From assembly GCA_053919585.1 (NCBI GenBank), contig CM132803.1: a stretch of DNA of 64,000 nt. One strand, given 5' to 3'. Below the pieces are notes generated by a model. That model was not told the DNA's origin and made no database searches. It saw only the letters and a program-made list of their open reading frames with translations. This DNA comes from Euprymna scolopes. Its lineage: Eukaryota. The translations under genes and the position numbers were made by a program. Shown one piece after another: positions 7,225 to 56,200 of this stretch (the first letter of the stretch is position 1; the number at the start of each line of letters is the position of its first letter).

Positions 7225-8183
7225 ATTATATTAGCATTAAGATGGACTCTTATAAAAATTTGATGTGCATTAAAAATAATACACAGTAACATACAAAAGA
7301 ATGGGAGTTAAATTTTTTTTTTAAAGAAATATTTTTATGGTAGCAAATTTAACTTCAGTTGGGAGCGACTTAAAAACAGTATTAATCATTCAATAGTATG
7401 ATCCTTAACTTTAACTTTGAGAATAATCCTTATTGAAAATTGGTAGGTTGATAGATGATACAGAAAATTAGTATTTCCCTAAAATAATATTCTATTTTTT
7501 ATTTGTATTGACAAGTTGATAACATCTAATGTATGTTAACTGAATTGACATCAATATTAAATTATTTTTAATACACTTAAGAGACATCATCATATTCAGT
7601 TTTGAACCTATAAATGGGTTGACTTATATACATTAGAGGGATTCATAAGAGATGTTCATACTTTTGCATACATATGGAGAAAATGTCATATTCTTTTCAT
7701 ATGTGAAAGTGATTTCAGATACACATTAAAATAATTTTTGTATTAGCTGTAATCTATATAAAAAACAAACAATGCCATGGTAGAGGGAATAACTATAAAA
7801 AAAAGTAAAAATCTATGAATTCAGTACAAAAAATATTGAATTAGAAGTGATTTTAGAACCTGGTAAGCAAACAGTCTGTTTAATGAGTTTCTACTTTCAT
7901 TTCATCAATCGACATATTAGATTTATTATATAAGCATACTGCTTAATCATTTTCTTTATTTTGTCTTTAAGTAATCGCTTGATGCAGAAACTTTTAAAGT
8001 TTTCATTTTCTTTTTAATTTCAGGTAAAGTATTTTGAATCTAACAAAGTTTATTTGTTATATTCAAAAGTGATTATTTTCCTAAGATTCAACATTGGTGA
8101 CTTATTCGATTTACATGTATGATGCGATGTTATGACATGTAACCTAAAATGTGTCCTTTTTTTCAGGAAAAATACAAATAAAA

Positions 8184-11100
8184 ATGACAAAATATAACAC
8201 AAGTGTTTACATGTTGATAATGATGATGCTGTATTTCTTCACATCTGTCATACATTTGATCCATGGTGTAGATCTGAGATACAAAATAGATGAAGGAAAA
8301 AGTCCAGGAACTTACCTTGGTGACATTGCTTCAGACTCTCATATCATGGATGACATTTCTTTGGAAAATAGAAGACTGATCACTTTCAATCAATTATTAC
8401 AAGAAATAACGGGCACTTCACAGTTGTTCCATGTCTCTCGGAAGAAAGGAAAACTTTTCACTTCACAGACATTGGATGCTGAATCCCTTTGTACCTACAA
8501 TACAGAATGTTTCCAAATGGTGGATGTGGCTGTACGACAAGGAAAGACATTCTTGAAGATAATTAAAATTAAAATAATTATAAATGATGTCAATGATAAT
8601 AAACCAGAATTTCCTGAAAAGGAAATTCATTTGGAATTCATGGAAGGTGTAAAAAAAGGATTTAAAAAATCTATTTCGAATGCAAAAGATAAAGACATTA
8701 GTATTTTGAATTCTCAAATCACATATGAACTAAGAGAACAAAATAATCAACCTTTTTCTTTATCAATCCAAAAAACACCTTTTGGTATTCCAAAACTAAG
8801 CATTATCGGTGAGGACACATTAGACAGAGAAGAAAAAGATTCATACATGTTGCAAGTGATTGCAAGAGATGGTGGATCTCCATCAAAAGAAAGTGTTTTA
8901 GATATCCATATTAAAGTAAAAGACTTCAATGATAATGCACCAGTTTTTAGCAAAGATATTTACAATGTTTCAATTAATAACCAAGAATATAGTGATAAGC
9001 CTTTTGTCACAGTTTTAGCAACAGATTTGGATGAAGGAGAAAATGGAAAAGTTTCTTATTATATCAGCACAGAAACATCAGAAGATGTAAAAAATCATTT
9101 CAAAGTAAATGGTTTATCAGGGGAAGTATTTTTGACAAACAAACTGCCCTCAAATCGTAAAAAAGTTTATAAATTATTTATTGGTGCAAAAGATGGTGGT
9201 AAACCTCCACTAAATGGACTCACAGGTATATTAGTAAATGTAATTAATACAGAAAATCGACCACCAAAGATTTTTGTGACTTTCATGTCAGAATCAACGG
9301 ACAAAATTGCAACTATTTTAGAAGACACTGAGATAGGCAGTTTTATTGCTTATGTTAAAGTGACTGACCCTGATGCTGGACAAAATGGACAGGTCAACTG
9401 TGAGTTGCACCATGATAAATTTCGTTTACAGAAATTAAAATCCAAAGAATACAAAGTGACATTGAAACACAAAGTTGACAGAGAAATGCAAGAGCACCAT
9501 GATGTTACAATCAGCTGCAAAGATGAAGGATCTCCTCCACAACACAGTGATAGCAAGTTCTCCATCAAAGTCAAAGATGTCAATGATGTAAGACCACAAT
9601 TTACAAAAGATACATTTAAATTCTCTGTGTTTGAGAATGAAAGTCCAAAGACGTCAGTTGGTTCTATCAATGCCACTGATCCTGATCTGGGAGCTGGCAG
9701 TAGACTCACATATTCTTTGCTTACGAAAAATGAAGACTTCCTACCTTTCAAGATAACCAGTGATGGCTTGATTTCAACAATCATGTCTCTCGACCATGAG
9801 TTCAAAGACATTTATAAATTCAACGTTTTAGTGAAAGATAATGGAAACCCTCCACTTGATAATAGCGTCAATGTCATTGTGCAGATTGAAGATAAAAATG
9901 ATAATGCTCCATATTTTACCTTTCCCAGTGTGAATCCTTTCAATCTCGATGTCAAATATCATCCACATCATACAAAGAACATCACTCTTCTCAAGGCTGC
10001 CGACAGTGACAGTCAAGAGAATGCATTTCTCAAATATGAAATAACTGCAGGCAACGATAAACAGTTGTTTGCCATCAATCATTATACTGGATTGTTGTCT
10101 TTCACTCGCTTACTTGGCCATCAAGATGCTGGCTCCTATCACCTGCAGTTTATGGTCAAGGATAGTGGTAGTCCAGTTTTATCTGCAAAGACATCAGTCT
10201 TTTTGACATTGACAGTTAGTAACAATACCGCAGATATCTTAAATGCTGCCTATACGCACACTGATATCAAGATCCACCAGTATTTACTCATTGTCATTGT
10301 GTTGGTTGCAGTCACCGTTGCTATACCAATTACTGCTGCAATTTCCATCTGCATCCTTCGTTGCATTGATACCAGAAGTGTTGCACAAGCACATCCATTG
10401 GCTGACTCTTCCAGCAAATATTATCCCGAACAGGCACATGCGATGCATCCGTCTTACCAGACTACTTATTGGTCTGGTGTGTCTGTTGCTGTGCGAGCAG
10501 AACAAGATGTGCTTTGTAGAACTCTACCGGGAAGAGGCAGAAGGCCACAACATCGTGCAGATGTCACAAATGATGGACGGAGAAGTTCAGCCCTGGGAAT
10601 TAAAGTCCAGACAGCTACAGAAGTCATCTATGAGGTAGGAATTCATTTTCAATTTTTACTTTTAAATAACTATATCAATCCAACCTTGGCTAAGAACCTT
10701 TACTCTCATTTTTCTTTTGTTACTTTGTAAGAAATATAAATGGAGAATTGTATGTAATAAAAATTGTCATGTAATAAAATTTAATAGACATCTTACAAAA
10801 ACTTAAAAAAAAACAAAAAAACAATGGCTACAGAAGTCATCTTAGAGGTTAGAATTTTTTTTTATTTTTTTTTTCCTTAAAATTTGTATCTCACTAATTA
10901 TTTTAAATTGCTTTTTTTTTTTTTAGAAGTAATAAAGCAATATTTTTTGCTAAGTGCTTGTAGTTAATTTGTATTTAGTAAGAATTCAACTCATTATTAT
11001 GAAACAAAAATGTAAAAATGCTATTTTCAGCTTGGCCAGTGATATGGCAACATTGCATTTAACATCTCTAGCATGTTTATCCATCAGACTGGCTTTTCAT

Positions 11101-12342
11101 TACATTCACCTTTAGGAAGTTTTACGCGTCTGCATTATTAGCTGCATTTTTGTTGAATACAAATAAAATGTTGTGTAAAAAACAAAACAAAAGAAAAAAC
11201 AACTCTTTATTAACTTGTTTTCATCATATTATCAACATGATTGGGATGATGCGGATTGTTCACATTACATTTAAGCTTCTGCTTATCAGTGCAGTCAGGG
11301 AAGCAGGAAACAGGAAGGGAATTCTAAAGTCTAGCAGTCTGAGAGAAGACTTAACAGTGAAGGGGTGGGATTTTGCTGTTGAGTTAGTTGGGAGTATGTA
11401 TGTCTAGAGGGAAAAATTGCTATGAGTTTATCAGAGTACATTTCATGAAAGTACTTGTAAAACAGGAACAGGGATGCAACATTCTCATCTTATAAGCTAT
11501 TTCGCTCTCTTTTGCTCATCAACATAATTTATAATATAAATTATTAAATCTAATACACATACATAAGAGTAAAGTTAAAGAAAATAAGTTCATTTTATTT
11601 CATATGTATTTATATATTTTGCTCCATTGAAAGGAAATCCGAGGTGCAACTGGTGGTAAGAGACATGAAGAGAGAAACCACATGGCTTCTACTTATCATC
11701 CAGACATGGGACCTTCTCCTCAATCAGACCAAGAAGATCCGTATGCTGAAAGATATGCTAATCATTGTCAAAATGTACCTGGTATGTTTTTCATTTTTAT
11801 CAATTAAGCTTTAAAATCCAGTGTAAAAATTAAAGCTTGAATATAATTCACTTTAAAATATTTATATAAAGATTGATTAAATAAACTAATCTCCGTTTTG
11901 GTCATTTCAGCAAACTTAATTTCCTGTATTCATTTCAGCATCTGAAACATCAGATTATTATGAACCACATTCAGCAGAGAATATTCACGAGGAATACACA
12001 GATATGAAACCTTCATTACAAACATTCATGTCTCCTGGGGATACAAGGACTCTTCCAAGACGGATGTATAAGGCAGATGCTGATCCTAACTCGGACTATA
12101 GGCAGTGGGGTAGTCTGAAGAAGAATGCGGCAGATAGATGCACATCTGAAACGCAGTTGCATTTGCACAATGTTGATGCAGACAATGTTACATGTGAGCC
12201 TCAACAAGAACAAACACAATCAGAAGTAGAAACTATACAAGATGACAAAGAAAAAGAGATAGAAAACATTGAGAATAAAGAAAACATTCAACAAGATTCT
12301 CCACCAAACACTCCAACATCAATGCATTCAATACAAACATAA
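8184..12342 (+). CDS. Pcdh: Protocadherin Pcdh-1, join(8184..10634,11634..11781,11939..12342), about 1000 aa
   Basis: Signal peptide, six cadherin repeats (DxNDNxPxF, DxD, LDxE), Pcdh-type C-x5-C in EC1, TM YLLIVIVLVAVTVAIPITAAISICIL. Acceptor tttcag|8167; GT/AG junctions keep frame (phase 0, then 1) and match all paralogs. Confidence 0.93.
11220..11510 (-). mobile_element. LINE 3'-end fragment (CR1/L2-like), same family as 43950-44390
   Basis: ggaagcaggaaacaggaagggaattctaaagtctagcag matches the reverse complement of ~44190-44240. Confidence 0.55.
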
Positions 12343-22675: not shown

Positions 22676-25600
22676 ATGATAAAACACAACACAACTGTAA
22701 ACATGATTATGATGATGCTGTATTTCTTCACATCTGTCATACATTTGATTCAAAGTGAAGACCTGAGATACAATATAAATGAGGGAAAAAGTCCAGGAAC
22801 TTACCTTGGTGACATTGCTTCAGACTCTCATATCATGGATGACATTTCTTTGGAAAATAGAAGACTGATCACTTTCAACCAATTATTACAAGAAATAACA
22901 GGCACTTCACAGTTGTTCCATGTCTCTCGGAAGAAAGGAAAACTTTTCACTTCACAGACATTGGATGCTGAATCTCTTTGTACCTACAATACAGAATGTT
23001 TCCAAATGGTGGATGTGGCTGTACGACAAGGAAAGACATTCTTGAAGATTATTAAAATTAAAATAATTATAAATGATGTCAATGATAATAAACCAGAATT
23101 TCCAGAAAAAGAAATTCATTTGGAATTCATGGAAGGTGTAAAGAAAGGATTTCAAAAATCTATTTCTAATGCAAAAGATAAAGACATTAGTATTTTGAAC
23201 TCCAAGGTTACATATGAATTAAGAGAACAAAATAATCAACCTTTTTCTTTATCAATTCAAAAAACACCTTTCGGAACTCCAAAACTAAGCATTGTGGTTA
23301 AAGAAGAAGTAGACAGAGAAGAAAAAGATTCATACATGTTACAAGTTATTGCTAGAGATGGTGGATCTCCACCAAAAGAAAATGTTCTAGATATTCACAT
23401 TGCAGTGAAAGACTTCAATGATAATGCACCTGTTTTTAGCAAAGATATTTATAATGTTTCCATTAATAACCAAGAATATGGTGATAAGCCTTTTGTTACG
23501 GTTTTAGCAACAGATTTGGACGAAGGTGAAAATGGAAAAGTTTCTTATTATATCAGCACAGAAACTTCAGAAAACATAAAGAGTCATTTTAAAATAAATG
23601 ATTTATCAGGGGAAGTATTTTTAACCAACAAACTGCCTTCAAATCGTAAAAAAGTTTATAAATTATTTATTGGTGCAAAAGATGGTGGCAATCCTCCACT
23701 AAATGGACTTGCAGGTATATTAGTAAATGTAATTAATACAGAAAATCGGCCACCAAAGATTTTTGTAACTTTCATGTCGGAATCGACTGACAAGATCGCA
23801 ACCATTTCAGAAGATACTGAGATTGGCAGTTTTATTGCTTATGTTAAAGTGACTGACCCTGATGCTGGACAAAATGGACAGGTCAACTGTGAGTTGCACC
23901 ATGATAAATTTCGTTTACAGAAATTAAAATCCAAAGAATACAAAGTGACATTGAAACACAAAGTTGACAGAGAAATGCAAGAGCACCATGATGTTACAAT
24001 CAGCTGCAAAGATGAAGGATCTCCTCCACAACACAGTGATAGCAAGTTCTCCATCAAAGTCAAAGATGTCAATGATGTAAGACCACAATTTACAAAAGAT
24101 ACATTTAAATTCTCTGTGTTTGAGAATGAAAGTCCAAAGACGTCAGTTGGTTCTATCAATGCCACTGATCCTGATCTGGGAGCTGGCAGTAGACTCACAT
24201 ATTCTTTGCTTACGAAAAATGAAGACTTCCTACCTTTCAAGATAACCAGTGATGGCTTGATTTCAACAATCATGTCTCTTGACCATGAGTTCAAAGACAT
24301 TTATAAATTCAACGTTTTAGTGAAAGATAATGGAAACCCTCCACTTGATAATAGCGTCAATGTCATTGTGCAGATTGAAGATAAAAATGATAATGCTCCA
24401 TATTTTACCTTTCCCAGTGTGAATCCTTTCAATCTCGATGTCAAATATCATCCACATCATACAAAGAACATCACTCTTCTCAAGGCTGCCGACAGTGACA
24501 GTCAAGAGAATGCATTTCTCAAATATGAAATAACTGCAGGCAACGATAAACAGTTGTTTGCCATCAATCATTATACTGGATTGTTGTCTTTCACTCGCTT
24601 ACTTGGCCATCAAGATGCTGGCTCCTATCACCTGCAGTTTATGGTCAAGGATAGTGGTAGTCCAGTTTTATCTGCAAAGACATCAGTCTTTTTGACATTG
24701 ACAGTTAGTAACAATACCGCAGATATCTTAAATGCTGCCTATACGCACACTGATATCAAGATCCACCAGTATTTACTCATTGTCATTGTGTTGGTTGCAG
24801 TCACCGTTGCTATACCAATTACTGCTGCAATTTCCATCTGCATCCTTCGTTGCATTGATACCAGAAGTGTTGCACAAGCACATCCATTGGCTGACTCTTC
24901 CAGCAAATATTATCCCGAACAGGCACATGCAATGCATCCGTCTTACCAGACTACTTATTGGTCTGGTGTGTCTGTTGCTGTGCGAGCAGAACAAGATGTG
25001 CTTTGTAGAACTCTACCGGGAAGAGGCAGAAGGCCACAACATCGTGCAGATGTTACAAATGATGGACGGAGAAGTTCAGCATTGGGAATCAAAGTGCAGA
25101 CGGCTACTGAGGTCATCTATGAGGTAGGAATTCATTTTCAATTTTCACTTACAAATAATTGTACCTACCCAGCATTGCATTGGATTCTTTTCTCTTGTTC
25201 ATTAAATAAAAGATTTTATACTATAAAAAGTTACTTTTGAAATAACATTTTACAGATAACTTACAAAAACTTGAAATTCCTCTTCAAATATAAAGTAATA
25301 ATTTTTGTTTAAATTTTTTTAAAACCATCTGTATTCACACACATACATGATTGTCTAACTTTGTCACAAATAATGCAATGTCATCTACTTTATATTTATG
25401 CTAATCCTTCTCTTTTTTTATAAAGATTTCTTTATTTTTTCTTAATTTTAGTGTTTGAAAATGTTTTGTGAAGACAGATATGACTAATCTGATTTCATAA
25501 TCAGAGAATGTCCAACTACCTTGTTCATAAACAATTAGTCAATCATGAGTGTGTGTGTATACATACAAATTACTTTCTTTTATAATTTGCTCATTGTCTC

Positions 25601-28418
25601 AAACCACTTAGATTTCCATATTACTAAATGTAAAGATTTATTAGCAAATAAAATGAAACATATTGTAGTATTGCATTTGTATGTACATGAAGAGAGATTA
25701 ATAGATGAATATTATTTTTTATTAGCAAGGAGTGCCGGCGTTGCCCGATCATAAAATATACTTAAATATTATATTTTAACTTATGCGGATCTTATATTTC
25801 TTATTATAGAATCAATTCTCTATTGATTATTACATATTATGTTGTACTCAATATTTTAAAAGTAAAAAACAAAAAATATGACTTATAGCCATCAGCTAGA
25901 ATTGAAACCAAAACTTATAGCACTCCAGCATGAGTTGTTACCACTTGAGCTATCATCAATTAGATAAAATATAGCTAAAAATGAACTAACATTAACGTAT
26001 AAATGTATATATATTTGCACATGCGTGCAATAAAAGTAGACTTATGCATGTCAAGTGCCAATTTCCTTTAGTTTTGATCCTTTAGCAGCTATTTTTACCA
26101 GCTAAAGACCTATAAAAAATGGTTCGTGCAATCATTTGACCCGACTCTTGCCACTTTGTGACCTTTCATCTTGGAAAAGATGCAGGTTGAAAATATGGAG
26201 ACAGACATACAGACAGAGCTAGTGAATTTTATAAATGAGATTTGTCCTGTCAATATAGCCAAAATGCTGCCTCTGTGCATGTAGAAGTTTGTAAATTGGA
26301 CATGTTAATGATGTTTTTCTTATTCTCATGTATCATTTTTTTTTTTTTTTCAATAATTAATTTTACACAAGTTTTTTTAAATTTTTTTTTTTTATTAAAG
26401 TACAAAAACAAGATAAATACAATAAAGTAAACAAAAAGAATTAAAAAACTTACTCAATGAATTAGGATGACATTTTCTATTTACCAATTCTAAAGAATGA
26501 AATGATTTCATTTGATAATTGTTGATTATCCAATGAAAATTAGTGCTGAATCTCTGGAAATGTATGTTACTAAAAGAACTATTGGGCTAATTAGAATATG
26601 AAATCAATGAAATTTATTTGAATTAAGATATTTGTTTTGCACAGACTGGGACTTTCTGTAGTAAGAGTTAACTATTGATTTGACAGATGCAATGATATTG
26701 ATGTTAAATGCCGAAAAATATATTTGCTTAATTTAATATATTGGATTTTTTATTTCATTTATTTTCAGAAATCACTTTCTTTAAAATTAATAAAGCAATA
26801 TTTTTTATTTGTATATTTCTTCTTATATAAAAATCTAAAAAAATTATATATGCTAGCGACACCTATTGGGAATATAAGATCGGCAAGGAGGCAGACAATC
26901 GACTTTCCACACACGAAGAATTTTACGTAAATTGAACACCCACACGTTGACGCTCCTCCAACAAAAATTCGGCAAATGTGTATTTCAGCGGCGTAAATTT
27001 AAGTTTTACACTAGTGGTGGCCATAAAGTGGGTGATCATTATACGTTAAATTATTATAGAAAAGTGATACCCCACTTTCTTTAAACTAACATTTCTTCAT
27101 ATCTTGGAAACTACTCGTTTGCTGGAATTTTAAACGTTATTTTCGTTTTTAACATCCTCAAAAACTTATAAATGTCTTAATTTTCCAAGTTTTTTTTCTA
27201 TAGTGTGTAAAGTCGATTGTCTGCCCCCTTGCCGATCTTATATTCCCAACAGGTGTCGCTAGCAGTATATCATTCAAAAACAAGACAAGATGGTGGGAAG
27301 TTTTTCTTCGATAAAATGTCTATAATATTTGATTTTCTTAAATAAAAACAAACTACTTGATCGATTTACGTGATTTTTGGAATATGACATTTTCATGCAG
27401 TGACAAGTACGTACATTATAAAGATTTTTTTCAGATTTTTATAGTAAAAAAGATTACTAGTGGACCATTTATAGCCTTGCACCATAAATCCTACTATTTT
27501 TTAAAAAGTAGTTAGTTGTGTTTATCAACATGTGTTAGACCAAATAGAGTCAATTAAAATTTTGAATAAAACATTAGTGTTTCATTTCATATCTGTTTGT
27601 GTACTTTGCTCTATTCAAAGGAAATCCGAGGGGCAGCTGGTGGTAAGAGACATGAAGAAAGAAACCACATGGCTTCTACTTATCATCCTGACATGGGACC
27701 TTCCCACTCAGATCAAGAAGATCCGTATGCTGAAAGATATGCTAACCATTGTCCAAATGTACCTGGTAAGTTGAAGATTTCATTTTTTATTAATTAAGCT
27801 TTAAAATTAAATTTTATACTGTGAATATTATTTGCATTAAAAGACGAATATTAAAAGTGATTTCATAAAATTTTATCTTTTCAGGCATTTCAGCATCTGA
27901 AACATCTGATTATTTTGATTATGAAAATTAAAAAGAAAAACATGAATATTTATTATTTTCATATCATAATAGTTAAATGTCTTTTTCAAACATGTTCTCC
28001 TTGATTCATTTCAGCATCTGAAACATCAGATTATTATGAACCACATTCAGCAGAGAATATTCACGAGGAATACACAGATATGAAACCTTCGTTACAAACA
28101 TTCATGTCTCCTGGAGATACAAGGACTCTTCCAAGACGGATGTATAAGGCAGATGCTGACCTTAACTCGGACTATAGGCAGTGGGGTAGTCTGAAGAAGA
28201 ATGCAGCAGATAGATGCACATCTGAAATGCAGTTGCATTTGCACAATGTTGATGCAGACAATGTTACATGTGAGCCTCAACAAGAACAAACACAATCAGA
28301 AGTAGAAACTATACAAGATGACAAAGAAAAAGAGATAGAAAATATTGAGAATAGAGAAAACCTTCAACAAGATTCTCCACCAAACACTCCAACATCAATG
28401 CATTCAATACAAACATAA
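22676..28418 (+). CDS. Pcdh: Protocadherin Pcdh-2, join(22676..25123,27621..27765,28015..28418), about 998 aa
   Basis: Same domain and exon structure as Pcdh-1 and its closest paralog; acceptor tcag|22655; frame-preserving GT/AG junctions. Confidence 0.93.
25722..26241 (-). mobile_element. Helitron-like element with an embedded tRNA-derived segment (25888-25954)
   Basis: Left end ttagc...gccggcgttgcccg (degenerate CTAG plus hairpin); right end gacagacatacagacag...ataaatgaga|t. The minus strand carries A-box TAGCTCAAGTGG and B-box-like GGTTTCAATTC. Confidence 0.55.
26851..27265. mobile_element. MITE with ~60-bp near-perfect terminal inverted repeats in intron 2 of Pcdh-2
   Basis: tgctagcgacacctattgggaatataagatcggcaagg...gcagacaatcgacttt versus aaagtcgattgtctgcc...ccttgccgatcttatattcccaacaggtgtcgctagca; TA-rich flanks. 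Confidence 0.9.
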
Positions 28419-36106: not shown

Positions 36107-39100
36107 ATGCAACATCAGATAATGCCAATAATTGTATGCATATTCCTGCTGGTCTTACAACTTTGCCAAGGTGCAGATCTGACATACAATGTTGATGAAG
36201 GTAAGAGTCCAGGTACTTACCTGGGTGACATTGCAGCTGACTCCCACATCATGGATGATGTCCCTTTGGAAAACAGGCGTTTGATCACTTTCAACCAACT
36301 GCGACAGGAAATGGCAGGCACTTCTCAGTTATTTCATGTCTCCGAGAAGAAAGGAAAACTTTTTACTGCTCAGACTCTGGATGCTGAATCAATGTGTAAA
36401 TGGAATACAGAATGCTTCCAAATGGTGGATGTTGCTGTACGACAAGGAAAGACATTCATGAAGATTATAAAAATTAAAATAATTATAAATGACATTAACG
36501 ATAATGCACCAAAATTTCCAGAGAAACAAATTAACATGCACATCTCTGAAGGCGTCAGAGAAGGTTTCAAAAAAACGGTTCCAGTTGCAAAAGACAAAGA
36601 TGTTAGTGTAATTAATTCGCAGATAACTTATGAACTGAAAAAGACAAAAAATGAACCGTTCTCTTTGTCAATAGATAAAACCCCATTTGGCCCAACACAA
36701 TTAGATTTATTTGTTGATGGTAAACTTGACAGAGAAAAGAAAGATTCGTACATGCTCCAAATAATTGCAAAAGACAATGGATCTATACCTAAACAAAGCA
36801 TTTTAAATATTCATATCATAATAACAGATTTGAATGACAATCCTCCAAGATTTACAAAAAGTATTTATAATGTTTCGATAAAAAATGAAGATTATAAAGA
36901 GAAGGCAATTGTTACTGTGTCCGCTATCGATTTGGATGAAGGAGAAAATGGAAAAGTTTTCTATCATTTTAGTTCACAAACATCAATTGATGACAAAAAC
37001 AAGTTTGAACTTAATGAAAAAACAGGAGAAATATTTTTAAAACAGAAATTACTGTCAGTCCAGAACATTTATAAATTGTATGTAATGGCAACTGACAGTG
37101 GACATTCACCATTAAGTGGATTTGCAGGAGTGTTAGTAAATATTATAAACACTGAAAACAGATCGCCAAATATTTTTGTCACTTTTATGTCTGATTCAAC
37201 AGATAACACAGCTACTATACTTGAAGACATTGAAATTGGTAGTTTTATTGCTTATGTTAAAGTAACTGACCCTGATGCTGGACAAAATGGACAGGTTAAC
37301 TGTGAGTTGCACCATGATAAATTTCGTTTACAAAAACTAAGATCCAAAGAATACAAAGTGACATTGAAACACAAAGTTGACAGAGAAATGCAAGAGCACC
37401 ATGATGTTACAATCAGCTGCAAAGATGAAGGATCTCCTCCACAACACAGTGATAGCAAGTTCTCCATCAAAGTCAAAGATGTCAATGATGTAAGACCACA
37501 ATTTACAAAAGATACATTTAAATTCTCTGTGTTTGAGAATGAAAGTCCAAAGACGTCAGTTGGTTCTATCAATGCCACTGATCCTGATCTGGGAGCTGGC
37601 AGTAGACTCACATATTCTTTGCTTACGAAAAATGAAGACTTCCTACCTTTCAAGATAACCAGTGATGGCTTGATTTCAACAATCATGTCTCTTGACCATG
37701 AGTTCAAAGACATTTATAAATTCAACGTTTTAGTGAAAGATAATGGAAACCCTCCACTTGATAATAGCGTCAATGTCATTGTGCAGATTGAAGATAAAAA
37801 TGATAATGCTCCATATTTTACCTTTCCCAGTGTGAATCCTTTCAATCTCGATGTCAAATATCATCCACATCATACAAAGAACATCACTCTTCTCAAGGCT
37901 GCCGACAGTGACAGTCAAGAGAATGCATTTCTCAAATATGAAATAACTGCAGGCAACGATAAACAGTTGTTTGCCATCAATCATTATACTGGATTGTTGT
38001 CTTTCACTCGCTTACTTGGCCATCAAGATGCTGGCTCCTATCACCTGCAGTTTATGGTCAAGGATAGTGGTAGTCCAGTTTTATCTGCAAAGACATCAGT
38101 CTTTTTGACATTGACAGTTAGTAACAATACCGCAGATATCTTAAATGCTGCCTATACGCACACCGATATCAAGATCCACCAGTATTTACTCATTGTCATT
38201 GTGTTGGTTGCAGTCACCGTTGCTATACCAATTACTGCTGCAATTTCCATCTGCATCCTTCGTTGCATTGATACCAGAAGTGTTGCACAAGCACATCCAT
38301 TGGCTGACTCTTCCAGCAAATATTATCCCGAACAGGCACATGCAATGCATCCGTCTTACCAGACTACTTATTGGTCTGGTGTGTCTGTTGCTGTGCGAGC
38401 AGAACAAGATGTGCTTTGTAGAACTCTACCGGGAAGAGGCAGAAGGCCACAACATCGTGCAGATGTCACAAATGATGGACGGAGAAGTTCAGCCCTGGGA
38501 ATTAAAGTGCAGACGGCTACTGAGGTTATCTATGAGGTAGGTGTCTTTCTAGTTAATTTGAAATAACATTTCATGAGGTAACTACAATTTCCAGACTTTT
38601 TTCATATGAGCACTTTTATTGATAGTACACACATGAAACTCTAGTCTCCTTCGAAGTAATCTCCTCCAGCTGTAATGCACTTGTACTGTTCCAACAATTT
38701 CTGGAAGACCCCACTGAAATTTTCTTGTGTGCGCGTGTCAATGATCCTCGTCACAGCCTTTTTCATCTCCTCAATTGTCTCATAATAACAGCCTCTAAGG
38801 TTTTCTTTGAGCTTAGAGAAGAACCAAAAGTCACAGGGAGTAAAGTTTAAAGTATATGGAGGGCGAGGAACTGTCTTCATGTCCATCTTGGTCAAATAGT
38901 CCGTGATAAGGATGTAGTTGTAGACTATAGATTTGGGACAAACTTCACACAGATCCTCCGCATGATTGTGTGTACAGTTCCTGACACTGACATCAAACTG
39001 TGCACTTAATGTCTCTAGACACATGACGGTCCATATAGATGAAATTCTTTATTTGGCCAATCAACTCTGGTGTTCTGACTTCCTTACTCCTCACACATCT

Positions 39101-40355
39101 CTCATCATGCCTCACAGACTCCCAGCCTTCCTTGAATCTCTTATGCCACTCAAAAACTGATGCTTGATGCATGCAAGATGATCCAAAAGTAGTCTGAAGC
39201 ATTCCATATGAATCTGTGGCATTTTTTTTCCAAGTTAAAAAAAGAATCTTATTGCATATCATTCTTCTCAAATGTCCTCATGTATAGATTAGATTTTTGA
39301 AATCCACTAGCTGTGACAATAAGGCTTTAGTGGAGTGTATTCCAATTCCTGCTGTTACTATTTATTTGAACCTGAAATCATGAAAATAGGTCAGTCATTT
39401 CACAGGATGTATAACAATAGTGTACTGTATTTTCAAGAGTCTACAACAATTTTAAATGCCTGTACAAAAAAGTCTGGAAACTTATTGAAGGCAATTTGTA
39501 AAATTTAATCTGGAAAATTTCTTTTTAACTAACATTTGTGCATTTTTCTTTTTACTGGGATTACTTCAATTCATTTTTATCTTTCGTTGTACTCATGAAA
39601 GGAAATCCGAGGTGCAACTGGTGGCAAGAGACATGAAGACAGAAACTGCATGGGTCCTGCATGTCACCCTGACATGGAACCCTCCTCTCGATCAGACCAA
39701 GATGATCCCTATGCTGAAAGATATGCAAACCACTGTCAAAATGTATCAGGTTAGTTCTTTCTTGTGGCGTACCATGACAATATAAGATAAAGAATTTTTA
39801 AAAAATTTATTTTTGAGAATAAATTTTGCAAAATAAATTAATGGAGGATTATTTTATTTTGCTCATTCTGGTTTTTAATGTGAAGTTGAAATTGAGTCAT
39901 TTATACAACTATTTTATTTTGCATTCATTTCAGCATCTGACACATCTGATTACTATGAACCACACTCATCAGAGAATATTCATGAGGAATACACAGATAT
40001 GAAACCTTCTATGCAAACATTCATGTCTCCTGGAGATACAAGAACTCTTCCAAGACGGATGTATAAGGCAGATGCTGACCCTAACTCTGACTACAGGCAG
40101 TGGGGTAGTCTGAAGAAGACTGCAGTGGATAGATACACTTCTGACACGCAGTTACAACTGAACAATGCAGAGGCAGACAATGTTACATGTGAGCCTCAAC
40201 AAGAACAAGTACAAAGCACATTGGAAGAAGCAGACGAACCAGTAGAAAAAGAGGAAGAAGAAAAAAATGCTACACACACTTTACCCAATGATGTGGATGT
40301 TCAGCAAAATTCCCCTCTCGAAATACCTCACACAATACATTCAACGCAAACTTGA
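36107..40355 (+). CDS. Pcdh: Protocadherin Pcdh-3, join(36107..38536,39602..39749,39934..40355), about 999 aa
   Basis: Signal peptide, 6 EC, TM; acceptor ttcag|36099; frame-preserving junctions. Confidence 0.93.
38572..39500 (-). mobile_element. Internally deleted mariner element in intron 2 of Pcdh-3
   Basis: TIR cores tttccagactttttt / aaaaaagtctggaaa. Transposase N-terminus (ASVFEWHKRFKEG) and C-terminus (PPYTLNFTPCDFWFF...GDYFEGD*, degenerate YSPDLAPCD) are present; the central catalytic region is missing. Confidence 0.9.
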
Positions 40356-45181: not shown

Positions 45182-48100
45182 ATGAAAATATCAGCATTAA
45201 TATTCTTGTGTTTCATCAAACTGTGCTGCAGTGCTGACCTGACATACAGTGTAGATGAGAGCAAGAGTCCAGGCACCTACCTGGGAGACATTGCTGCTGA
45301 CTCCCACATCATGGATGATGTCCCTTTGGAAAATCGGCGACTAATCACTTTCAACCAACTGCGACAAGGAAATGCAGGCACATTACAGTTGTTTCATGTC
45401 TCCAAGAAAAAAGGCAAACTCTTTACTGCCCAAACTCTCGATGCTGAATCAATGTGTAAGCGTGACATTGAGTGTTTTCAAATGGTTGATGTGGCTGTGA
45501 GGGAAGGAAAAACGTTTATGAAAATTATAAAGATTAAAGTCATAATAAATGATGTCAATGATAATCAACCTGAATTTCCAGAGAAAGAAATTGATTTACA
45601 CTTTTCTGAAGGAGTTAGTAAAGGATTCAAAAAACCCATTCCGAATGCCATTGACAAAGACGTTAGTGCTATTAATTCCAAAATAACTTATGAACTAAAG
45701 AAGAACAAAAATGACCCATTTTCTCTTGTTGTACAAAAGATTCCATTTGGAGCACCAAAACTTAGTATTTCTGTTGAAGAAAAGTTAGACCGTGAAAGTA
45801 AAGATTTTTACTCAATACAAGTTATAAGCAAAGATGGCGGATCACCGGCAAAGCAAAGCGTTTTAAATGTAAACATAATTATTGAAGACATGAATGATAA
45901 TGCACCAATGTTTAGCAAAGACATTTATAACATTTCAATAATGAACAAAGATTATGGAAATGTACCAATCGTAGAATTGACGGCACATGATTTAGACGAT
46001 GGAGAAAATGGAAAAGTTTCATATTATTACCAATCACAAACGTCTGACGAAATCAAAAAGTTTTTTGAGTTGGATAAAGAAACAGGGAAAATATATCTTA
46101 AAGAAAAGTTACCTCAAAATCCAGAATCTGTCTATAAGTTATTTGTTAGTGCAGAAGATGGCGGGGAATCGACACTTAGTGGTTATGCTGGAGTTCTTGT
46201 GAATGTTGTTAACACTCGAAATCGACCACCAAATATATTTGTTACATTCATGTCTGAAGCTACAGATAACACAGCTACAATTTTAGAAGATGTTGAAATT
46301 GGTAGTTTTATTGCTTATGTTAAAGTGACTGACCCTGATGCTGGACAAAATGGACAGGTTAATTGTGAGTTGCACCATGATAAATTTCGTTTACAAAAAC
46401 TAAGATCCAAAGAATACAAAGTGACATTGAAACACAAAGTTGACAGAGAAATGCAAGAGCACCATGATGTTACAATCAGCTGCAAAGATGAAGGATCTCC
46501 TCCACAACACAGTGATAGCAAGTTCTCCATCAAAGTCAAAGATGTCAATGATGTAAGACCACAATTTACAAAAGATACATTTAAATTCTCTGTGTTTGAG
46601 AATGAAAGTCCAAAGACGTCAGTTGGTTCTATCAATGCCACTGATCCTGATCTGGGAGCTGGCAGTAGACTCACATATTCTTTGCTTACGAAAAATGAAG
46701 ACTTCCTACCTTTCAAGATAACCAGTGATGGCTTGATTTCAACAATCATGTCTCTTGACCATGAGTTCAAAGACATTTATAAATTCAACGTTTTAGTGAA
46801 AGATAATGGAAACCCTCCACTTGATAATAGCGTCAATGTCATTGTGCAGATTGAAGATAAAAATGATAATGCTCCATATTTTACCTTTCCCAGTGTGAAT
46901 CCTTTCAATCTCGATGTCAAATATCATCCACATCATACAAAGAACATCACTCTTCTCAAGGCTGCCGACAGTGACAGTCAAGAGAATGCATTTCTCAAAT
47001 ATGAAATAACTGCAGGCAACGATAAACAGTTGTTTGCCATCAATCATTATACTGGATTGTTGTCTTTCACTCGCTTACTTGGCCATCAAGATGCTGGCTC
47101 CTATCACCTGCAGTTTATGGTCAAGGATAGTGGTAGTCCAGTTTTATCTGCAAAGACATCAGTCTTTTTGACATTGACAGTTAGTAACAATACCGCAGAT
47201 ATCTTAAATGCTGCCTATACGCACACTGATATCAAGATCCACCAGTATTTACTCATTGTCATTGTGTTGGTTGCAGTCACCGTTGCTATACCAATTACTG
47301 CTGCAATTTCCATCTGCATCCTTCGTTGCATTGATACCAGAAGTGTTGCACAAGCACATCCATTGGCTGACTCTTCCAGCAAATATTATCCCGAACAGGC
47401 ACATGCAATGCATCCGTCTTACCAGACTACTTATTGGTCTGGTGTGTCTGTTGCTGTGCGAGCAGAACAAGATGTGCTTTGTAGAACTCTACCGGGAAGA
47501 GGCAGAAGGCCACAACATCGTGCAGATGTCACAAATGATGGACGTAGAAGTTCGACTCTTGGAATTAAAGTGCAGACGGCTACTGAGGTCATCTATGAAG
47601 TAAGTATTTAATTTAGTATAATACTGAACAATAATATCACTTTTAGTTTCATTATTCCTTTAAAATTGCATTAGAGTGACATTTTAAAAAATAAATATTC
47701 ATATCCTTTGCATGGAACTATACATGGCCAAAGTGTACTCAATTTTCATATCCATAACAAGTGGAAAGAAAAGAGTGAAATTATTTTCATATTCATAATC
47801 ATTTTATGCCTTGGCAATTTAAGCATAATAAATGATTTTATTATTTATTTTTATACTATAATAAATTTGAATAGATAATTTTTTTTTCTAAGTTATCCTT
47901 CTTATTTCAAATGTTTAACTTATATTTTTATGTTTATAAACCAACTATAAAATCATTATTGAAGTAATTTTTACTATAAAATATTTTTGATACTTTTATT
48001 GAATATTCATTCAGTTTGTTTTGTCATAGTAGTAGTTTTAATAAAATGCATAGATTGTTTCATCTTGTATTAATTATTCAATAAAGGAAATTCGAGGTGC

Positions 48101-49105
48101 AACTGGCGGTAAAAGACATGAAGATAGAAACTGTATGGGTTCTGCATGTCATCCTGACATGGAACCATCTTTTCAAGCGGATGAAGATGATCCCTATGCT
48201 GAAAGATATGCAAATCATTGTCAAAATATCTCAAAACGTAAGCCTCATTACTTTTTAAAAAAAATAAATATTTGACAATTATCAGCTTTTTATAATAAGC
48301 AGAGAAAAGCGTTAAATGAAGAATTTTTACAGAAAATATAGTTAACCAAATGGTGAAAATAAATTTCTTAATAATTTCTTCTTTTGGTGAATTACTAAAT
48401 TCTTTCCTATCCATTGTTAAACTAATTTTTTTTAAAAACTTTTTTTCCCCAATTAATTAAAGATACTAATAGGAAATTATCTGATGCATCAAAGTGAAGT
48501 ATCAGATTTTAGCCTTTTATCTATAAGGAAGTGATGTAAATTATTATACAACAGAATTGAGCATTTAATGACAAGAAAATATACATGTTTACTAACTTGA
48601 AACAATGTATTTTTTAAGTATTTCTTTATACTGCATTGTTGTATAAAGAACTTACATATTATTTATGACTATGTTTACATTTTCTAAAAACGTTTTTACA
48701 GATAATGAAACCTCTGATTACTATGAACCACATTCAACAGAGAATATCCAAGAGGAATACACAGATATGAAACCTTCATTACAAACATTCATGTCTCCTG
48801 GAGATACAAGGACTCTTCCAAGACGGATGTATAAGGCAGATGCTGACCCTGATTATAGACAATGGTCTACCCTTAAGCGGAATGCAGTGGATAGATGTAC
48901 TTCTGACACGCAGTTACAGCTGAACAATGTAGAGGCAGACAATGTTACGTGTGAACCTCAACAAGAACAAACAGTAGTAGAAGAACCAACAGAGAAAGAA
49001 GAACAAGAAGCAATAGAAGAGACACAAAACATTTCTTATTCACAAAATCTTGAACATGATTCTTTACCAGAATCACCAAAATCTAACCATTCCCATCACA
49101 CATGA
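45182..49105 (+). CDS. Pcdh: Protocadherin Pcdh-4, join(45182..47599,48087..48237,48702..49105), about 990 aa
   Basis: Signal peptide, 6 EC, TM; acceptor tttcag|45124; frame-preserving junctions. Confidence 0.92.
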
Positions 49106-53220: not shown

Positions 53221-56200
53221 ATGGGAAACATGATGATACTTTTGTTGTTTTTCTTCAATGTTATACAAATCTGTCAATGCATTGACTTGACATACAATGT
53301 GGATGAAGGGAAAACTCCAGGTACCTACTTAGGGGACATTGCTGCTGACTCCCACATCATGGATGATGTCTCTTTAGAAAACAGACAATTTGTCACTTTT
53401 AATCAGTTGCAACAGGGAGTATCAAGTAATACTCAGTTGTTTCATGTCTCCAAGAAAAAAGGGAAACTCTTCACTGCTCAAACTCTTGATGCAGAATCAA
53501 TGTGTCAACGTGATATTGAGTGTTTTCAAATGGTTGACGTGGCTGTGAGGGAAGGAAAAACATTCATGAAGATCATAAAGATAAAAGTTATAATAAATGA
53601 TGTCAATGATAATCAACCCGAATTTCCGCAGAAAGAAATCGATTTACAAATCCTTGAAGGGATGAGTAAAGGTTTTGAAAAATCCATTCCGAATGCCATT
53701 GATAAAGATATTAGTGCAGTCAATTCAAAAATTACTTATAAATTAGAGAACAATGACAAAGTGCCATTTTCTCTTCTAATTCATAGGCTTCCTTTCAGTA
53801 CACCCAAATTAAGTATTGCTGTGCAAGAAAGATTGGACCGAGAAAATAAAGACTCTTATGTGATACAATTAATTGCCAAAGATGGTGGATCACCCCCAAA
53901 ACAAAATGTTTTAAACATTAACATCTATGTTACAGACGTCAATGATAACCCTCCCATTTTTAGCAAAGATATATATAATGTTTCTATTGAAAATAAAATG
54001 GCAAAAAACATTCCAATAACAAAAGTGACAGCAAATGATTTGGATGAAGGAGAAAATGGAAAAGTTTCATATCAAATAAGTGCAGAAACATCGGAAGATG
54101 TTAAAAATCTCCTTGAATTGAAAGAAATTTCTGGAGAAATATTTCTACGTGAAAACCTGCCATCCAGTGAAAACAGAATATTGAAATTATTAGTCACAGC
54201 TACAGACAATGGTCAACCACCATTAAGTGGTTTTGCTGTGGTGCTGATAAATATGATTAATACTCAGAACAGACCACCAAAAATATTTATTACATTCATG
54301 TCCGAATCTAAAGAAAACACAGTTTCAATTCTGGAAGACGTTGAAATTGGTAGTTTTATTGCTTATGTTAAAGTAACTGACCCTGATGCTGGACAAAATG
54401 GACAGGTTAATTGTGAGTTGCACCATGATAAATTTCGTTTACAAAAACTAAGATCCAAAGAATACAAAGTCACATTGAAACACAAAGTTGACAGAGAAAT
54501 GCAAGAGCACCATGATGTTACAATCAGCTGCAAAGATGAAGGATCTCCTCCACAACACAGTGATAGCAAGTTCTCCATCAAAGTTAAAGATGTCAATGAT
54601 GTAAGACCACAATTTACAAAAGATACATTTAAATTCTCTGTGTTTGAGAATGAAAGTCCAAAGACGTCAGTTGGTTCTATCAATGCCACTGATCCTGATC
54701 TGGGAGCTGGCAGTAGACTCACATATTCTTTGCTTACGAAAAATGAAGACTTCTTACCTTTCAAGATAACCAGTGATGGCTTGATTTCAACAATCATGTC
54801 TCTTGACCATGAGTTCAAAGACATTTATAAATTCAACGTTTTAGTGAAAGATAATGGAAACCCTCCACTTGATAATAGCGTCAATGTCATTGTGCAGATT
54901 GAAGATAAAAATGATAATGCTCCATATTTTACCTTTCCCAGTGTGAATCCTTTCAATCTCGATGTCAAATATCATCCACATCATACAAAGAACATCACTC
55001 TTCTCAAGGCTGCCGACAGTGACAGTCAAGAGAATGCATTTCTCAAATATGAAATAACTGCAGGCAACGATAAACAGTTGTTTGCCATCAATCATTATAC
55101 TGGATTGTTGTCTTTCACTCGCTTACTTGGCCATCAAGATGCTGGCTCCTATCACCTGCAGTTTATGGTCAAGGATAGTGGTAGTCCAGTTTTATCTGCA
55201 AAGACATCAGTCTTTTTGACATTGACAGTTAGTAACAATACCGCAGATATCTTAAATGCTGCCTATACGCACACTGATATCAAGATCCACCAGTATTTAC
55301 TCATTGTCATTGTGTTGGTTGCAGTCACCGTTGCTATACCAATTACTGCTGCAATTTCCATCTGCATCCTTCGTTGCATTGATACCAGAAGTGTTGCACA
55401 AGCACATCCATTGGCTGACTCTTCCAGCAAATATTATCCCGAACAGGCACATGCAATGCATCCGTCTTACCAGACTACTTATTGGTCTGGTGTGTCTGTT
55501 GCTGTGCGAGCAGAACAAGATGTGCTTTGTAGAACTCTACCGGGAAGAGGCAGAAGGCCACAACATCGTGCAGATGTTACAAATGATGGACGTAGAAGTT
55601 CAACTCTTGGAATTAAAGTGCAAACGGCCACCGAGGTCATCTATGAGGTAAGGACTCCTTTATTTTTGTTTTCATTCACAATTAAAAAAGTTATAATTAA
55701 TTAATTGTTCTAAAAAATAAATAAAAGGAAACAGAAATGGAAACATAATAGTTATTCATAAATTTTACAGAAGTTTAGATCAACATGGTACTTTGGGTTT
55801 CAAACTTAGGGAGTTGATCTAGGCAGATAAAAACTGGGTTATTTTGAATTTTTACTATAAACCACCTATTGGCTTTCATGTGGCTGATGAAAGTTAGTGA
55901 GTAGTTTAAAATTAAAGATTTTGCATTAATAGTTATAAAGTTCTGTCCAGAATTTTGATATAGTCCTCAGAATTATCCTGATTGCAATTGTCCAGTCCTT
56001 GAGCTAAAATAATCCTAAAACATTGAGCCGCTTTAATGTTTTAATGTTGGCACTGTATTCTTTGAGAGGAATAGCTCATGTTTCTTGGTTCAAACCTTTT
56101 GCACATATTTGTTGAAAAGATCAATGTGTATAATCACTCAATATTACTTGTTTCCAAAAATCAAGTCTTTCTAATAACATTTTGGGTAAAAATAAACTAA

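What the first reader, a model, noticed from the sequence alone, without database searches (positions are those of the whole stretch)
10623..11642. Splicing assembles an invariant YEEI (Src-family SH2 ligand) across the exon 2/3 junction
Seen: exon 2 ends ...EVIYE and exon 3 begins EIRG in all five genes, giving EVIYEEIRG, which is invisible in the ORF track. Established: pYEEI is the classic optimal Src/Fyn SH2-binding sequence, and E-x-I-Y-E is a good Src substrate context. Additional acidic Tyr sites are conserved (DPYAE, DYYEP, EEYTD). Intron retention would destroy the motif and truncate the tail within 3-38 codons. Inference: a shared tyrosine-kinase signalling output.
Basis: partly seen in the sequence, partly recalled or inferred. 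Interest (0 to 1): 0.7.

Follow-up and report, generated by a model that had tools for sequence, protein, structure and literature searches.

The report
Conserved YEEI tyrosine motif in cephalopod protocadherins
Five neighbouring cuttlefish protocadherin (neuronal adhesion) genes each build the motif EVIYE|EIRG by splicing two exons, and the same YEEI core is kept in most cuttlefish and all sampled octopus protocadherin tails, so it is probably a real, still untested docking site for tyrosine-kinase signalling or receptor trafficking.

Summary
All five + strand protocadherin genes end the large exon with EVIYE|GT and start the next exon with AG|EIRG. The intron is phase 0.

- **Junction in transcripts:** assembled contigs from three studies carry exactly the 10634^11634 joint. 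A cuttlefish database protein reads EVIYEEIRG.
- **Selection in the window:** the nine motif codons show five synonymous-only variable codons and no amino-acid change. The introns are only about 48% identical.
- **Breadth:** in 8 divergent decapod tails the only invariant column is the Glu at Y+2, and 7 of 8 have IY[E/Q]EI. All 35 octopod tails carry YEEIPAMSG.
- **Splicing is incidental:** in Argonauta the motif lies inside one exon. Splicing is needed to make the motif in cuttlefish, but it is not the essence of the motif.
- **Not universal:** some decapod paralogues have His or no Tyr at that position.

The Src-type SH2-ligand reading fits every sequence rule I could check, and the motif resembles the FAK/Pyk2 DYAEI site. 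Phosphorylation and binding are untested. A YxxΦ AP-2 sorting signal, as in L1, is a serious rival.

I found no paper describing the motif. The scan lists this same stretch once more (s1-244955) and no other DNA.

The parts
8184..10634 (+). Gene 1, coding part of the large exon ('exon 2'): signal peptide, cadherin repeats, transmembrane helix, about 91 aa of proximal tail ending ...TATEVIYE
   Evidence: ORF 8151-10730; first Met at residue 12 of the translation; Pfam Cadherin 3.9e-75 and Cadherin_2; TM at residue 711 of 828
10620..10634 (+). Gene 1, first half of the motif: E V I Y E, followed by donor GTAGGA
   Evidence: joint in RNA contigs
10635..11633 (+). Gene 1, intron 2 (999 nt, phase 0, GT..AG)
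   Evidence: It holds a degenerate copy of the donor region at 10827-10856 and a highly represented repeat at about 11268-11555 (table 2)
11634..11781 (+). Gene 1, exon 3 (148 nt): EIRGATGGKRHEE...DPYAERYANHCQNVP, ending in phase 1
   Evidence: joints 10634^11634 and 11781^11939
11939..12342 (+). Gene 1, last coding exon: (A)SETSDYYEP...EEYTD...KPSLQTFMSP...SIQT, then stop
   Evidence: (loose end CATCTGAAACA after 11781)
25109..25123 (+). Gene 2, EVIYE at the exon end (donor GTAGGA)
27621..27765 (+). Gene 2, exon 3, starts EIRGAAGG
38522..38536 (+). Gene 3, EVIYE at the exon end (donor GTAGGT)
39602..39749 (+). Gene 3, exon 3, starts EIRGATGG
47585..47599 (+). Gene 4, EVIYE at the exon end (GAA|GTAAGT)
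48087..48237 (+). Gene 4, exon 3, starts EIRGATGG
55633..55647 (+). Gene 5, EVIYE at the exon end (donor GTAAGG)
57028..57172 (+). Gene 5, exon 3, starts EIRGATGG

Best explanation
The window holds five tandem cuttlefish-type protocadherin genes. Each has its own two small tail exons. About 90 residues after the membrane helix, the tail carries a short linear motif with family consensus [D/E]-x-[I/V]-Y-[E/Q]-E-I. In decapods a phase-0 intron splits it after Y-[E/Q], so only the spliced mRNA encodes it. These points are shown. Inferred: the tyrosine is phosphorylated by a Src-type non-receptor kinase. The acidic residue at -3, the beta-branched residue at -1 and the acidic residues at +1/+2 fit that substrate preference. 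The resulting pY-E-E-I would then dock an SH2 domain of the Src-family class, which recognises pTyr plus a hydrophobic pocket for Ile at +3. That would couple homophilic protocadherin adhesion to tyrosine-kinase signalling, in the manner of the FAK/Pyk2 DYAEI autophosphorylation site. The downstream conserved tyrosines (DPYAERY, DYYEP, EEYTD) would be further docking sites. Splicing here is constitutive gene structure, not the point of the motif, because octopods encode the same YEEI within one exon.
For: Junction and motif. RNA contigs from 3 studies. A spliced A. pharaonis protein reads EVIYEEIRG. Protein-level selection: 5 of 9 motif codons vary synonymously and none non-synonymously, while introns are about 48% identical. 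Family breadth: spliced transcript ORFs of divergent clusters read AEVIYE^EIEGD, EAIYEEIGE, DVIY(Q/R)^EIGVDEE, DIIYQ^EIDTED, EGIYQ^EIEGDD and EVVYE^EIGVS. In alignment A1 of 8 tails (20-28% identity to the first tail, mean column identity 39%) the only invariant column is the Glu at Y+2. All 35 octopod tails from four species have YEEIP, including two that share only 48-53% tail identity with the query. The order YEEI ... [H/P]Y[Q/A][D/E]RY is shared by octopod and cuttlefish tails, which argues for one ancestral motif. Sequence rules from the literature: Src SH2 binds pYEEI with high affinity, and Ile at +3 and Glu at +1/+2 each contribute (PMC2888578). The classic probe EPQpYEEIPIYL shares QYEEIP with octopods. 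FAK/PYK2 share (S/T)(D/E)DYAEI (PMC1570463), and the Pyk2 site is SIESDIYAEIPDET (PMC2193795). Mouse Pcdh-alpha is reported to interact with Fyn (cited in PMC6339937). The tails match no Pfam domain, consistent with a linear-motif region.
Against: There is no phosphorylation or binding data of any kind. Four residues is little information, and the same residues satisfy YxxPhi. Y+1 tolerates Q and R. The octopod flank (S-R-Q-Y) lacks the -1 Ile/Val and -3 acid that make the decapod version look like a good Src substrate. Some decapod paralogues have His or no Tyr at the position, so the family can do without it. The last exon codon (GAG/CAG) and the first G of exon 3 are also constrained by splice-site consensus. 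No outgroup (Nautilus, other molluscs) could be searched.
Confidence: 0.42

Rival explanations
1. It is a tyrosine-based YxxPhi sorting signal. Unphosphorylated Y-E-E-I would bind the mu2 subunit of the AP-2 clathrin adaptor and drive endocytosis or trafficking of the protocadherin, possibly switched off by tyrosine phosphorylation. This is not exclusive of the SH2 reading.
For: Y-x-x-I is met in every copy. Y and the +3 hydrophobic residue are among the most constant positions, and Y+1 varies between E, Q and R. Precedent in a neuronal adhesion molecule: L1 Tyr1176 followed by the alternatively spliced RSLE exon makes YRSL, which binds AP-2, and Src phosphorylation of that Tyr blocks AP-2 binding (PMC2173551).
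Against: Glu at Y+2 is the single invariant column across decapod tails and is invariant in 35 octopod tails. From general knowledge, a bare YxxPhi signal does not require this. The conserved -1 Ile/Val and -3 acidic residue in decapods are also not part of a mu2 signal.
Confidence: 0.25
2. It is an ITIM-like motif ([I/V/L/S]-x-Y-x-x-[I/V/L]). After phosphorylation it would recruit a tandem-SH2 phosphatase of the SHP/Corkscrew type and dampen signalling at contacts.
For: The window genes read V-I-Y-E-E-I, which fits the consensus exactly. Five of seven Tyr-bearing decapod clusters have V or I at -2.
Against: The homologous octopod motif has R or G at -2 (SRQYEEI, ERLYEEI, NGLYEEI). Two decapod clusters have A or G at -2. 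The defining -2 position is therefore not conserved, whereas +1 to +3 are.
Confidence: 0.08
3. The junction is a regulated switch. Intron retention, alternative acceptors or cassette exons at YE|EI would produce tail-less or motif-less isoforms, so that splicing decides whether a given protocadherin can signal.
For: Short ORFs that read through the donor occur beside spliced ORFs in 5 of the 7 paralogue clusters examined, each grouped at 90% identity. For one paralogue, contigs show three forms: the canonical YE|EIGV, an acceptor 4 nt upstream that shifts the frame (YE-TGDRS...stop), and a 78-nt insert with a stop.
Against: For the window gene, only the canonical joint leaves the donor among the joints listed in four runs (13 further joints were not shown), and no contig covers 10692-10835. 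Read-through contigs may be pre-mRNA or DNA, and frame-shifting forms may be splicing noise. Octopods do not have the intron inside the motif.
Confidence: 0.12
4. The block is conserved for a reason unrelated to tyrosine signalling: an unknown partner, an LC3-interacting [W/F/Y]xx[L/I/V] core, or nucleotide constraints of the splice sites.
For: There is no functional data. The codon before the donor (GAG/CAG) and the G after the acceptor match splice consensus. Some paralogues lack the Tyr.
Against: Synonymous changes occur within the motif codons, including GAG/GAA at the donor and ATC/ATT in exon 3. Octopods keep YEEI with no junction in it. The flanks do not fit the extended LIR pattern as I recall it, which was not tested with a tool.
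Confidence: 0.13

Closest known systems
pYEEI, the optimal Src-family SH2 ligand (hamster polyomavirus middle-T peptide EPQpYEEIPIYL)
   Same: The window genes encode Y-E-E-I exactly. Octopod protocadherins encode Q-Y-E-E-I-P, six consecutive residues identical to the reference peptide (peptide sequence from PMC2888578).
   Different: The reference ligand is defined by measured binding to phosphopeptide. Here neither phosphorylation nor binding is known, and decapod paralogues vary at Y+1 (E, Q, R).
FAK Tyr397 / Pyk2 Tyr402 autophosphorylation site, (S/T)(D/E)DYAEI, the Src SH2 docking site
   Same: The Y-x-E-I core has acidic residues before it and often after it. Compare Pyk2 SDIYAEIPDE with decapod SDIIYQEIDTED and PDVIYQEIGVDEE.
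   Different: FAK and Pyk2 phosphorylate themselves. A protocadherin tail has no kinase domain and would need a kinase in trans.
L1CAM Tyr1176 | RSLE: a tyrosine motif completed by the next exon in a neuronal adhesion molecule
   Same: The Tyr lies at or near an exon end, and the rest of the Y-x-x-hydrophobic motif comes from the following exon. The protein is a neuronal homophilic adhesion receptor. In L1 the site is both a Src target and an AP-2 signal (PMC2173551).
   Different: In L1 the RSLE exon is a documented alternative, neuron-specific exon. Here the downstream exon appears constitutive in the window gene, and the intron falls one residue later (YE|EI).
Vertebrate clustered protocadherins (alpha/gamma): variable exon spliced to shared constant tail exons, with Fyn and FAK/Pyk2 links
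   Same: One large exon encodes the cadherin repeats, TM and proximal tail (the Pfam scan matched Cadherin in five stretches plus Cadherin_2; the count of six repeats is my reading, not a tool result). Small exons follow, and the genes lie in a tandem head-to-tail array. A tyrosine-kinase connection is reported for vertebrate tails.
   Different: Each cuttlefish gene has its own exons 3 and 4 rather than a shared constant region. The tails match no Pfam family. Earlier papers report no vertebrate CM1-3 motifs in octopus protocadherins (PMC6339937).

Membership tests
Protocadherin (cadherin superfamily, single large ectodomain exon) | Several extracellular cadherin repeats with an N-terminal Cadherin_2 domain, one TM helix and a cytoplasmic tail | tested here: met
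   Pfam Cadherin at E 1e-73 to 1e-76 with 5 matched stretches, plus Cadherin_2, in all five ORFs. TM at residue 711 of 828. Closest named proteins are A. pharaonis PCDHGA and similar.
Vertebrate-type clustered protocadherin locus | Variable exons all spliced to one shared set of constant tail exons | tested here: not met
   Every gene is followed by its own exon 3 and exon 4, 0.5-2.5 kb downstream. The RNA joint goes to the gene's own exon 3.
Src-family-class SH2 ligand (pY-[E/D/T]-[E/N/D]-[I/L/V/M]) | Sequence Y-E-E-I or an allowed variant | tested here: met
   YEEI in 5 of 5 window genes once spliced, in the A. pharaonis protein and in 35 of 35 octopod tails. Other decapod clusters have Y[E/Q/R]EI.
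Src-family-class SH2 ligand (pY-[E/D/T]-[E/N/D]-[I/L/V/M]) | Located on the cytoplasmic side, outside a folded domain | tested here: met
   About 91 residues C-terminal of the only TM helix. No Pfam domain on the tails. Indel-rich, poorly conserved surroundings. Disorder itself was not predicted.
Src-family-class SH2 ligand (pY-[E/D/T]-[E/N/D]-[I/L/V/M]) | The tyrosine is phosphorylated in vivo | not testable with these tools
   Needs phosphoproteomics. The tryptic peptide VQTATEVIYEEIR spans the junction.
Src-family-class SH2 ligand (pY-[E/D/T]-[E/N/D]-[I/L/V/M]) | Phospho-dependent binding to an SH2 domain | not testable with these tools
   Needs a binding assay with cephalopod SH2 domains.
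YxxPhi AP-2 (mu2) sorting signal | Y-x-x-bulky hydrophobic residue in a cytoplasmic tail | tested here: met
   Y-E-E-I. Binding to mu2 is not testable here.
ITIM | [I/V/L/S] at -2 together with Y-x-x-[I/V/L] | tested here: inconclusive
   Met in the window genes (V-I-Y-E-E-I) and in 5 of 7 decapod clusters. Not met in octopods (R or G at -2).
L1-type splice-completed tyrosine motif | The motif straddles an exon junction | tested here: met
   YE|EI with a phase-0 intron in five genes, supported by RNA contigs. The same junction appears in six other decapod clusters. Not so in Argonauta.
L1-type splice-completed tyrosine motif | The completing exon is alternatively used, giving isoforms with and without the motif | tested here: inconclusive
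   Only the canonical joint is seen for the window gene. Alternative acceptor, insert and read-through forms are seen in contigs of paralogues. Contigs cannot quantify isoforms.

The most novel reading that the evidence does not exclude
YEEI is an ancestral signalling hub of coleoid protocadherins, older than the decapod-octopod split and kept through their separate gene-family expansions. It would link homophilic recognition to Src-family kinases, a functional parallel to vertebrate Pcdh-alpha/Fyn and Pcdh/FAK-Pyk2. In decapods the intron inside the motif would let read-through or alternative acceptors produce signalling-dead isoforms gene by gene.
Probability: 0.2. Interest if true: 0.75.

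Novelty: new member of a known kind. Interest (0 to 1): 0.52.

Why it matters
Cephalopods expanded protocadherins independently of vertebrates. Published work states that their cytoplasmic partners are unknown and that vertebrate tail motifs are absent (PMC6339937; PMC7339444). A short motif kept in most cuttlefish subfamilies and in all sampled octopus tails, with the sequence of a textbook Src SH2 ligand, gives a concrete and cheap hypothesis to test: one tryptic peptide, one phosphopeptide and one Y-to-F mutant. If it holds, it would show that two independent protocadherin expansions both feed into non-receptor tyrosine kinases. If it is instead an AP-2 signal, it would point to regulated endocytosis of these adhesion codes. 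Either answer opens the tail biology of cephalopod protocadherins.

Tried and rejected
- **Genomic loci of divergent paralogues.** I asked for these to test the intron position directly. The ENA and A. pharaonis records returned no DNA. Intron position in other paralogues therefore rests on read-through ORFs whose residue after Y[E/Q] is Val, from the GT of the donor, and on spliced transcript ORFs.
- **Word search with the spliced tail of P0001.** It found nothing new.
- **Exhaustive representative search with P0001:496-705.** It gave only 11 hits, one of them a full-length protocadherin (P0047). Spliced tails are rare in the libraries, and no outgroup could be assessed.
- **RNA-editing lead.** Y+1 is Q (CAG) in some contigs and R (CGG) in others of one paralogue. 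The two contig sets differ by 1.2% with all substitution types, so this looks like a species or allele difference. Editing is not shown.
- **Pfam on tails and single exons.** No family matched.
- **Literature.** No paper holds protocadherin plus YEEI, or YEEI plus octopus. One unrelated hit came up for protocadherin + octopus + intracellular domain + SH2. The motif table of Styfhals 2019 has no cytoplasmic Tyr motif. Albertin 2015 is not held, so its supplement was not checked.
- **LC3-interacting-region reading.** Considered and set aside, because the flanks do not fit the extended pattern as I remember it. This was not tool-tested.
- **Joined exon model.** I used the natural database protein P0001 and transcript ORFs instead.
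- **N runs at 32330-32462 and 32694-32826.** Left alone.
Full report
**What is in the window**

The 64-kb window is AT-rich (22-39% GC). It carries five + strand ORFs of 811-859 aa, spaced roughly 8-14 kb apart. Each scores as a protocadherin ectodomain: Pfam Cadherin at E 1e-73 to 1e-76 with five matched stretches, plus Cadherin_2. Each has one transmembrane helix and about 91 further residues before the ORF is interrupted. The closest named proteins are Acanthosepion (Sepia) pharaonis protocadherins, 90% identical over the region from EC6 to the end of the exon. Unnamed ENA contigs are 94% identical. The source is therefore a cuttlefish, not identified to species.

**Checking the observation**

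- The degenerate donor pattern for E-V-I-Y-E followed by GT occurs exactly five times, once at the end of each big ORF. Shuffles give 0.02.
- The acceptor pattern AG followed by E-I-R-G also occurs exactly five times, each 487-2497 nt downstream of a donor. Shuffles give 0.04.
- All five introns are phase 0 with GT..AG ends.
- Exon 3 is 145-151 nt and ends in phase 1.
- A last exon follows in each gene and carries DYYEP and EEYTD. DPYAE lies in exon 3.

**RNA evidence**

I laid contigs of four public runs on window 8100-12400.

- Three runs from three studies, one of them an oligo-dT RNA-seq library, contain a contig that skips exactly 999 nt. The ends are GT..AG, and the cut can be placed at 10634^11634.
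- Two runs show the next joint at 11781^11939.
- Among the joints listed, no other leaves the exon-2 donor (13 further joints were not shown), and no contig covers 10692-10835 just inside the intron.

These are assembled contigs with only 25-26 nt on the short side, and the paralogues are almost identical here. The result therefore establishes the junction for this gene group, not for gene 1 alone, and it says nothing about isoform proportions.

Independent support comes from an A. pharaonis database protein (P0001) that reads EVIYEEIRGATGGKRHE, although that gene model wrongly fuses two genes. Transcript-derived ORFs of other paralogues give further support, described below.

**Is the conservation meaningful?**

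Within the window the answer is weak by itself. The last 45 codons of exon 2 are nearly identical in all five genes, with 13 codons varying only synonymously and one amino-acid change. Introns next to the junction are only 47-49% identical. That shows protein-level purifying selection on the whole proximal tail, but not on the motif in particular. In the nine motif codons there are five synonymous-only variable codons and no replacement.

The wider family is more informative. Cluster members retrieved for seven divergent Sepia-type protocadherins include spliced transcript ORFs that read:

| Cluster | Sequence across the junction |
|---|---|
| 1 | AEVIYE^EIEGD |
| 2 | EAIYEEIGE |
| 3 | DVIY(Q/R)^EIGVDEE |
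| 4 | DIIYQ^EIDTED |
| 6 | EGIYQ^EIEGDD |
| 7 | EVVYE^EIGVS |

One cluster has no Tyr (ESSRQ-MCIEEV). In an alignment of eight such tails (20-28% identity to the first tail, mean column identity 39%), the only invariant column is the Glu at Y+2, and IY[E/Q]EI is present in 7 of 8.

Fourteen further divergent ORFs that read through the donor end in [I/V/L]Y[E/Q]-Val in ten cases. The other four end in SHQ, SHQ, THQ or AHH followed by Val. The intron position is therefore shared widely, but a minority of paralogues lack the tyrosine.

**Octopods**

A tail search from an Argonauta protein returned 35 proteins from Argonauta hians, Octopus bimaculoides, O. sinensis and O. vulgaris. Every one carries YEEIP (mostly SSRQYEEIPAMSG). 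This includes two proteins with only 48-53% tail identity, which read ERLYEEIPANLG and NGLYEEIPAMSG.

Mapping one Argonauta protein on its genomic locus shows three coding exons. YEEI lies inside the middle exon, seven codons before its donor, and the preceding junction lies about 50 codons upstream.

Octopod and cuttlefish tails share the order RTL..., R[R/K]SS..., YEEI..., [H/P]Y[Q/A][D/E]RY. I therefore take the two YEEI motifs as homologous, with different intron positions.

Two consequences follow. The motif most likely predates the decapod-octopod split. 'Assembled by splicing' is a feature of decapod gene structure rather than of the motif.

**What it most likely does**

No tool here can show phosphorylation or binding, so this part is inference from sequence rules.

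- The Src SH2 domain binds pYEEI with high affinity. Ile at +3 and the two Glu residues each contribute measurably, and the standard probe is EPQpYEEIPIYL (PMC2888578). The window genes match YEEI, and octopods match QYEEIP.
- In decapods the preceding residues (acidic at -3, Ile/Val at -1) also fit what I know of Src-type kinase substrate preference. This is general knowledge, not tested here.
- The closest natural analogue is the FAK/Pyk2 autophosphorylation and Src-docking site, (S/T)(D/E)DYAEI. In Pyk2 it reads SIESDIYAEIPDET (PMC1570463 and PMC2193795). It shares the Y-x-E-I core and the acidic surroundings with decapod SDIIYQEIDTED.
- Vertebrate protocadherins have reported links to Fyn and to FAK/Pyk2, which makes a tyrosine-kinase output plausible by analogy only.

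I put about 0.4 on the SH2-docking reading.

**Rivals**

- **YxxPhi AP-2 sorting signal.** The same residues fit this signal. The precedent is close: in L1, Tyr1176 is followed by the alternatively spliced RSLE exon. The composite YRSL binds AP-2, and Src phosphorylation of the Tyr blocks that binding (PMC2173551). The invariance of Glu at +2 and the conserved -1/-3 positions argue for something more specific than a mu2 signal, but the two functions can coexist.
- **ITIM.** This reading fits the window genes (V-x-Y-x-x-I) but not the octopod motif (R or G at -2).
- **Splice-site constraints.** These could explain the NAG codon before the donor and the G after the acceptor. They cannot explain the synonymous variation within the motif or its retention in octopods without a junction.

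**Is splicing a switch?**

For the window gene I saw only the canonical joint. For paralogues, short read-through ORFs stand beside spliced ones in 5 of the 7 clusters examined. For one paralogue, contigs show the canonical junction, an acceptor 4 nt upstream that shifts the frame, and a 78-nt insert with a stop. These may be pre-mRNA, DNA or splicing noise. Contigs cannot decide, so this remains a lead (about 0.12).

**Novelty**

- The held literature contains no paper with protocadherin and YEEI, or YEEI and octopus.
- The octopus protocadherin paper lists only extracellular, TM and PP1-type motifs. It states that vertebrate CM motifs are absent and that intracellular interactions are unexplored.
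- The original octopus genome paper and the Wang and Ragsdale review are not in the library, so prior mention there cannot be excluded.
- The kind of element, a tyrosine-based linear motif in an adhesion-receptor tail, is well known. Its presence and depth of conservation in cephalopod protocadherins appear to be undescribed.

I did not touch the N runs.

Noticed in passing
window 12007-12051 (gene 1); also 28083, 40002, 48770 and 57373: All five last exons encode KPS[L/M]QTFMSPGDTRT. L-Q-T-F-M-S fits the WAVE-complex interacting receptor sequence (Phi-x-T/S-F-x-x) as I recall it. The review read says only that delta2- and a few alpha-protocadherins carry a WIRS. Related tails have SLKTFMSP and TLHTFNSF, while others lack the T/S-F.
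   Followed up: partly
window 11953-11967 (gene 1) and the same place in the other four genes: The conserved SDYYEP motif (Y-x-x-P, the Crk/Abl/Nck SH2 type from general knowledge) recurs as SDYIEP, SDCYES and a four-fold repeated SDY[L/V]EP in more distant cuttlefish protocadherins.
   Followed up: partly
window 10827-10856: A degenerate copy of the exon-2 end plus donor (26 of 30 bases identical, with TAT GAG GTAGG changed to TTA GAG GTTAG) sits 193 nt inside intron 2 of gene 1 only. It is a small local duplication.
   Followed up: partly
window about 11268-11555 (intron 2 of gene 1): This stretch has very high summed contig depth in all four runs (up to about 6000), with many internal joints and loose ends. 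It behaves like a dispersed, expressed repeat or transposon fragment.
   Followed up: no
L006, L007, L008 (transcript contigs of a paralogue): One cuttlefish protocadherin shows three forms at the YE|EI junction: canonical, an acceptor 4 nt upstream (frameshift, stop after 15 codons), and a 78-nt insert with an in-frame stop.
   Followed up: partly
L002-L005 (transcript contigs of another paralogue): The residue after the motif Tyr is Q (CAG) in two runs and R (CGG) in two others. Overall the contigs differ by 1.2% with all substitution types, so this is probably a species or allele difference rather than A-to-I editing.
   Followed up: yes
L001 (Argonauta hians, 24 kb): Three tandem protocadherin genes lie about 6.5-7 kb apart, each with its own two small tail exons. 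YEEIPAMSG is encoded inside the middle exon.
   Followed up: yes
window 9350-9811, 23839-24300, 37252-37713, 46315-46776, 54363-54824 (- strand): A 153-aa antisense ORF recurs inside the conserved EC4-EC6 part of every gene. It is most simply a by-product of the conserved sense sequence.
   Followed up: no
window 32330-32462 and 32694-32826: Two runs of 133 N each, either assembly gaps or masked sequence.
   Followed up: no
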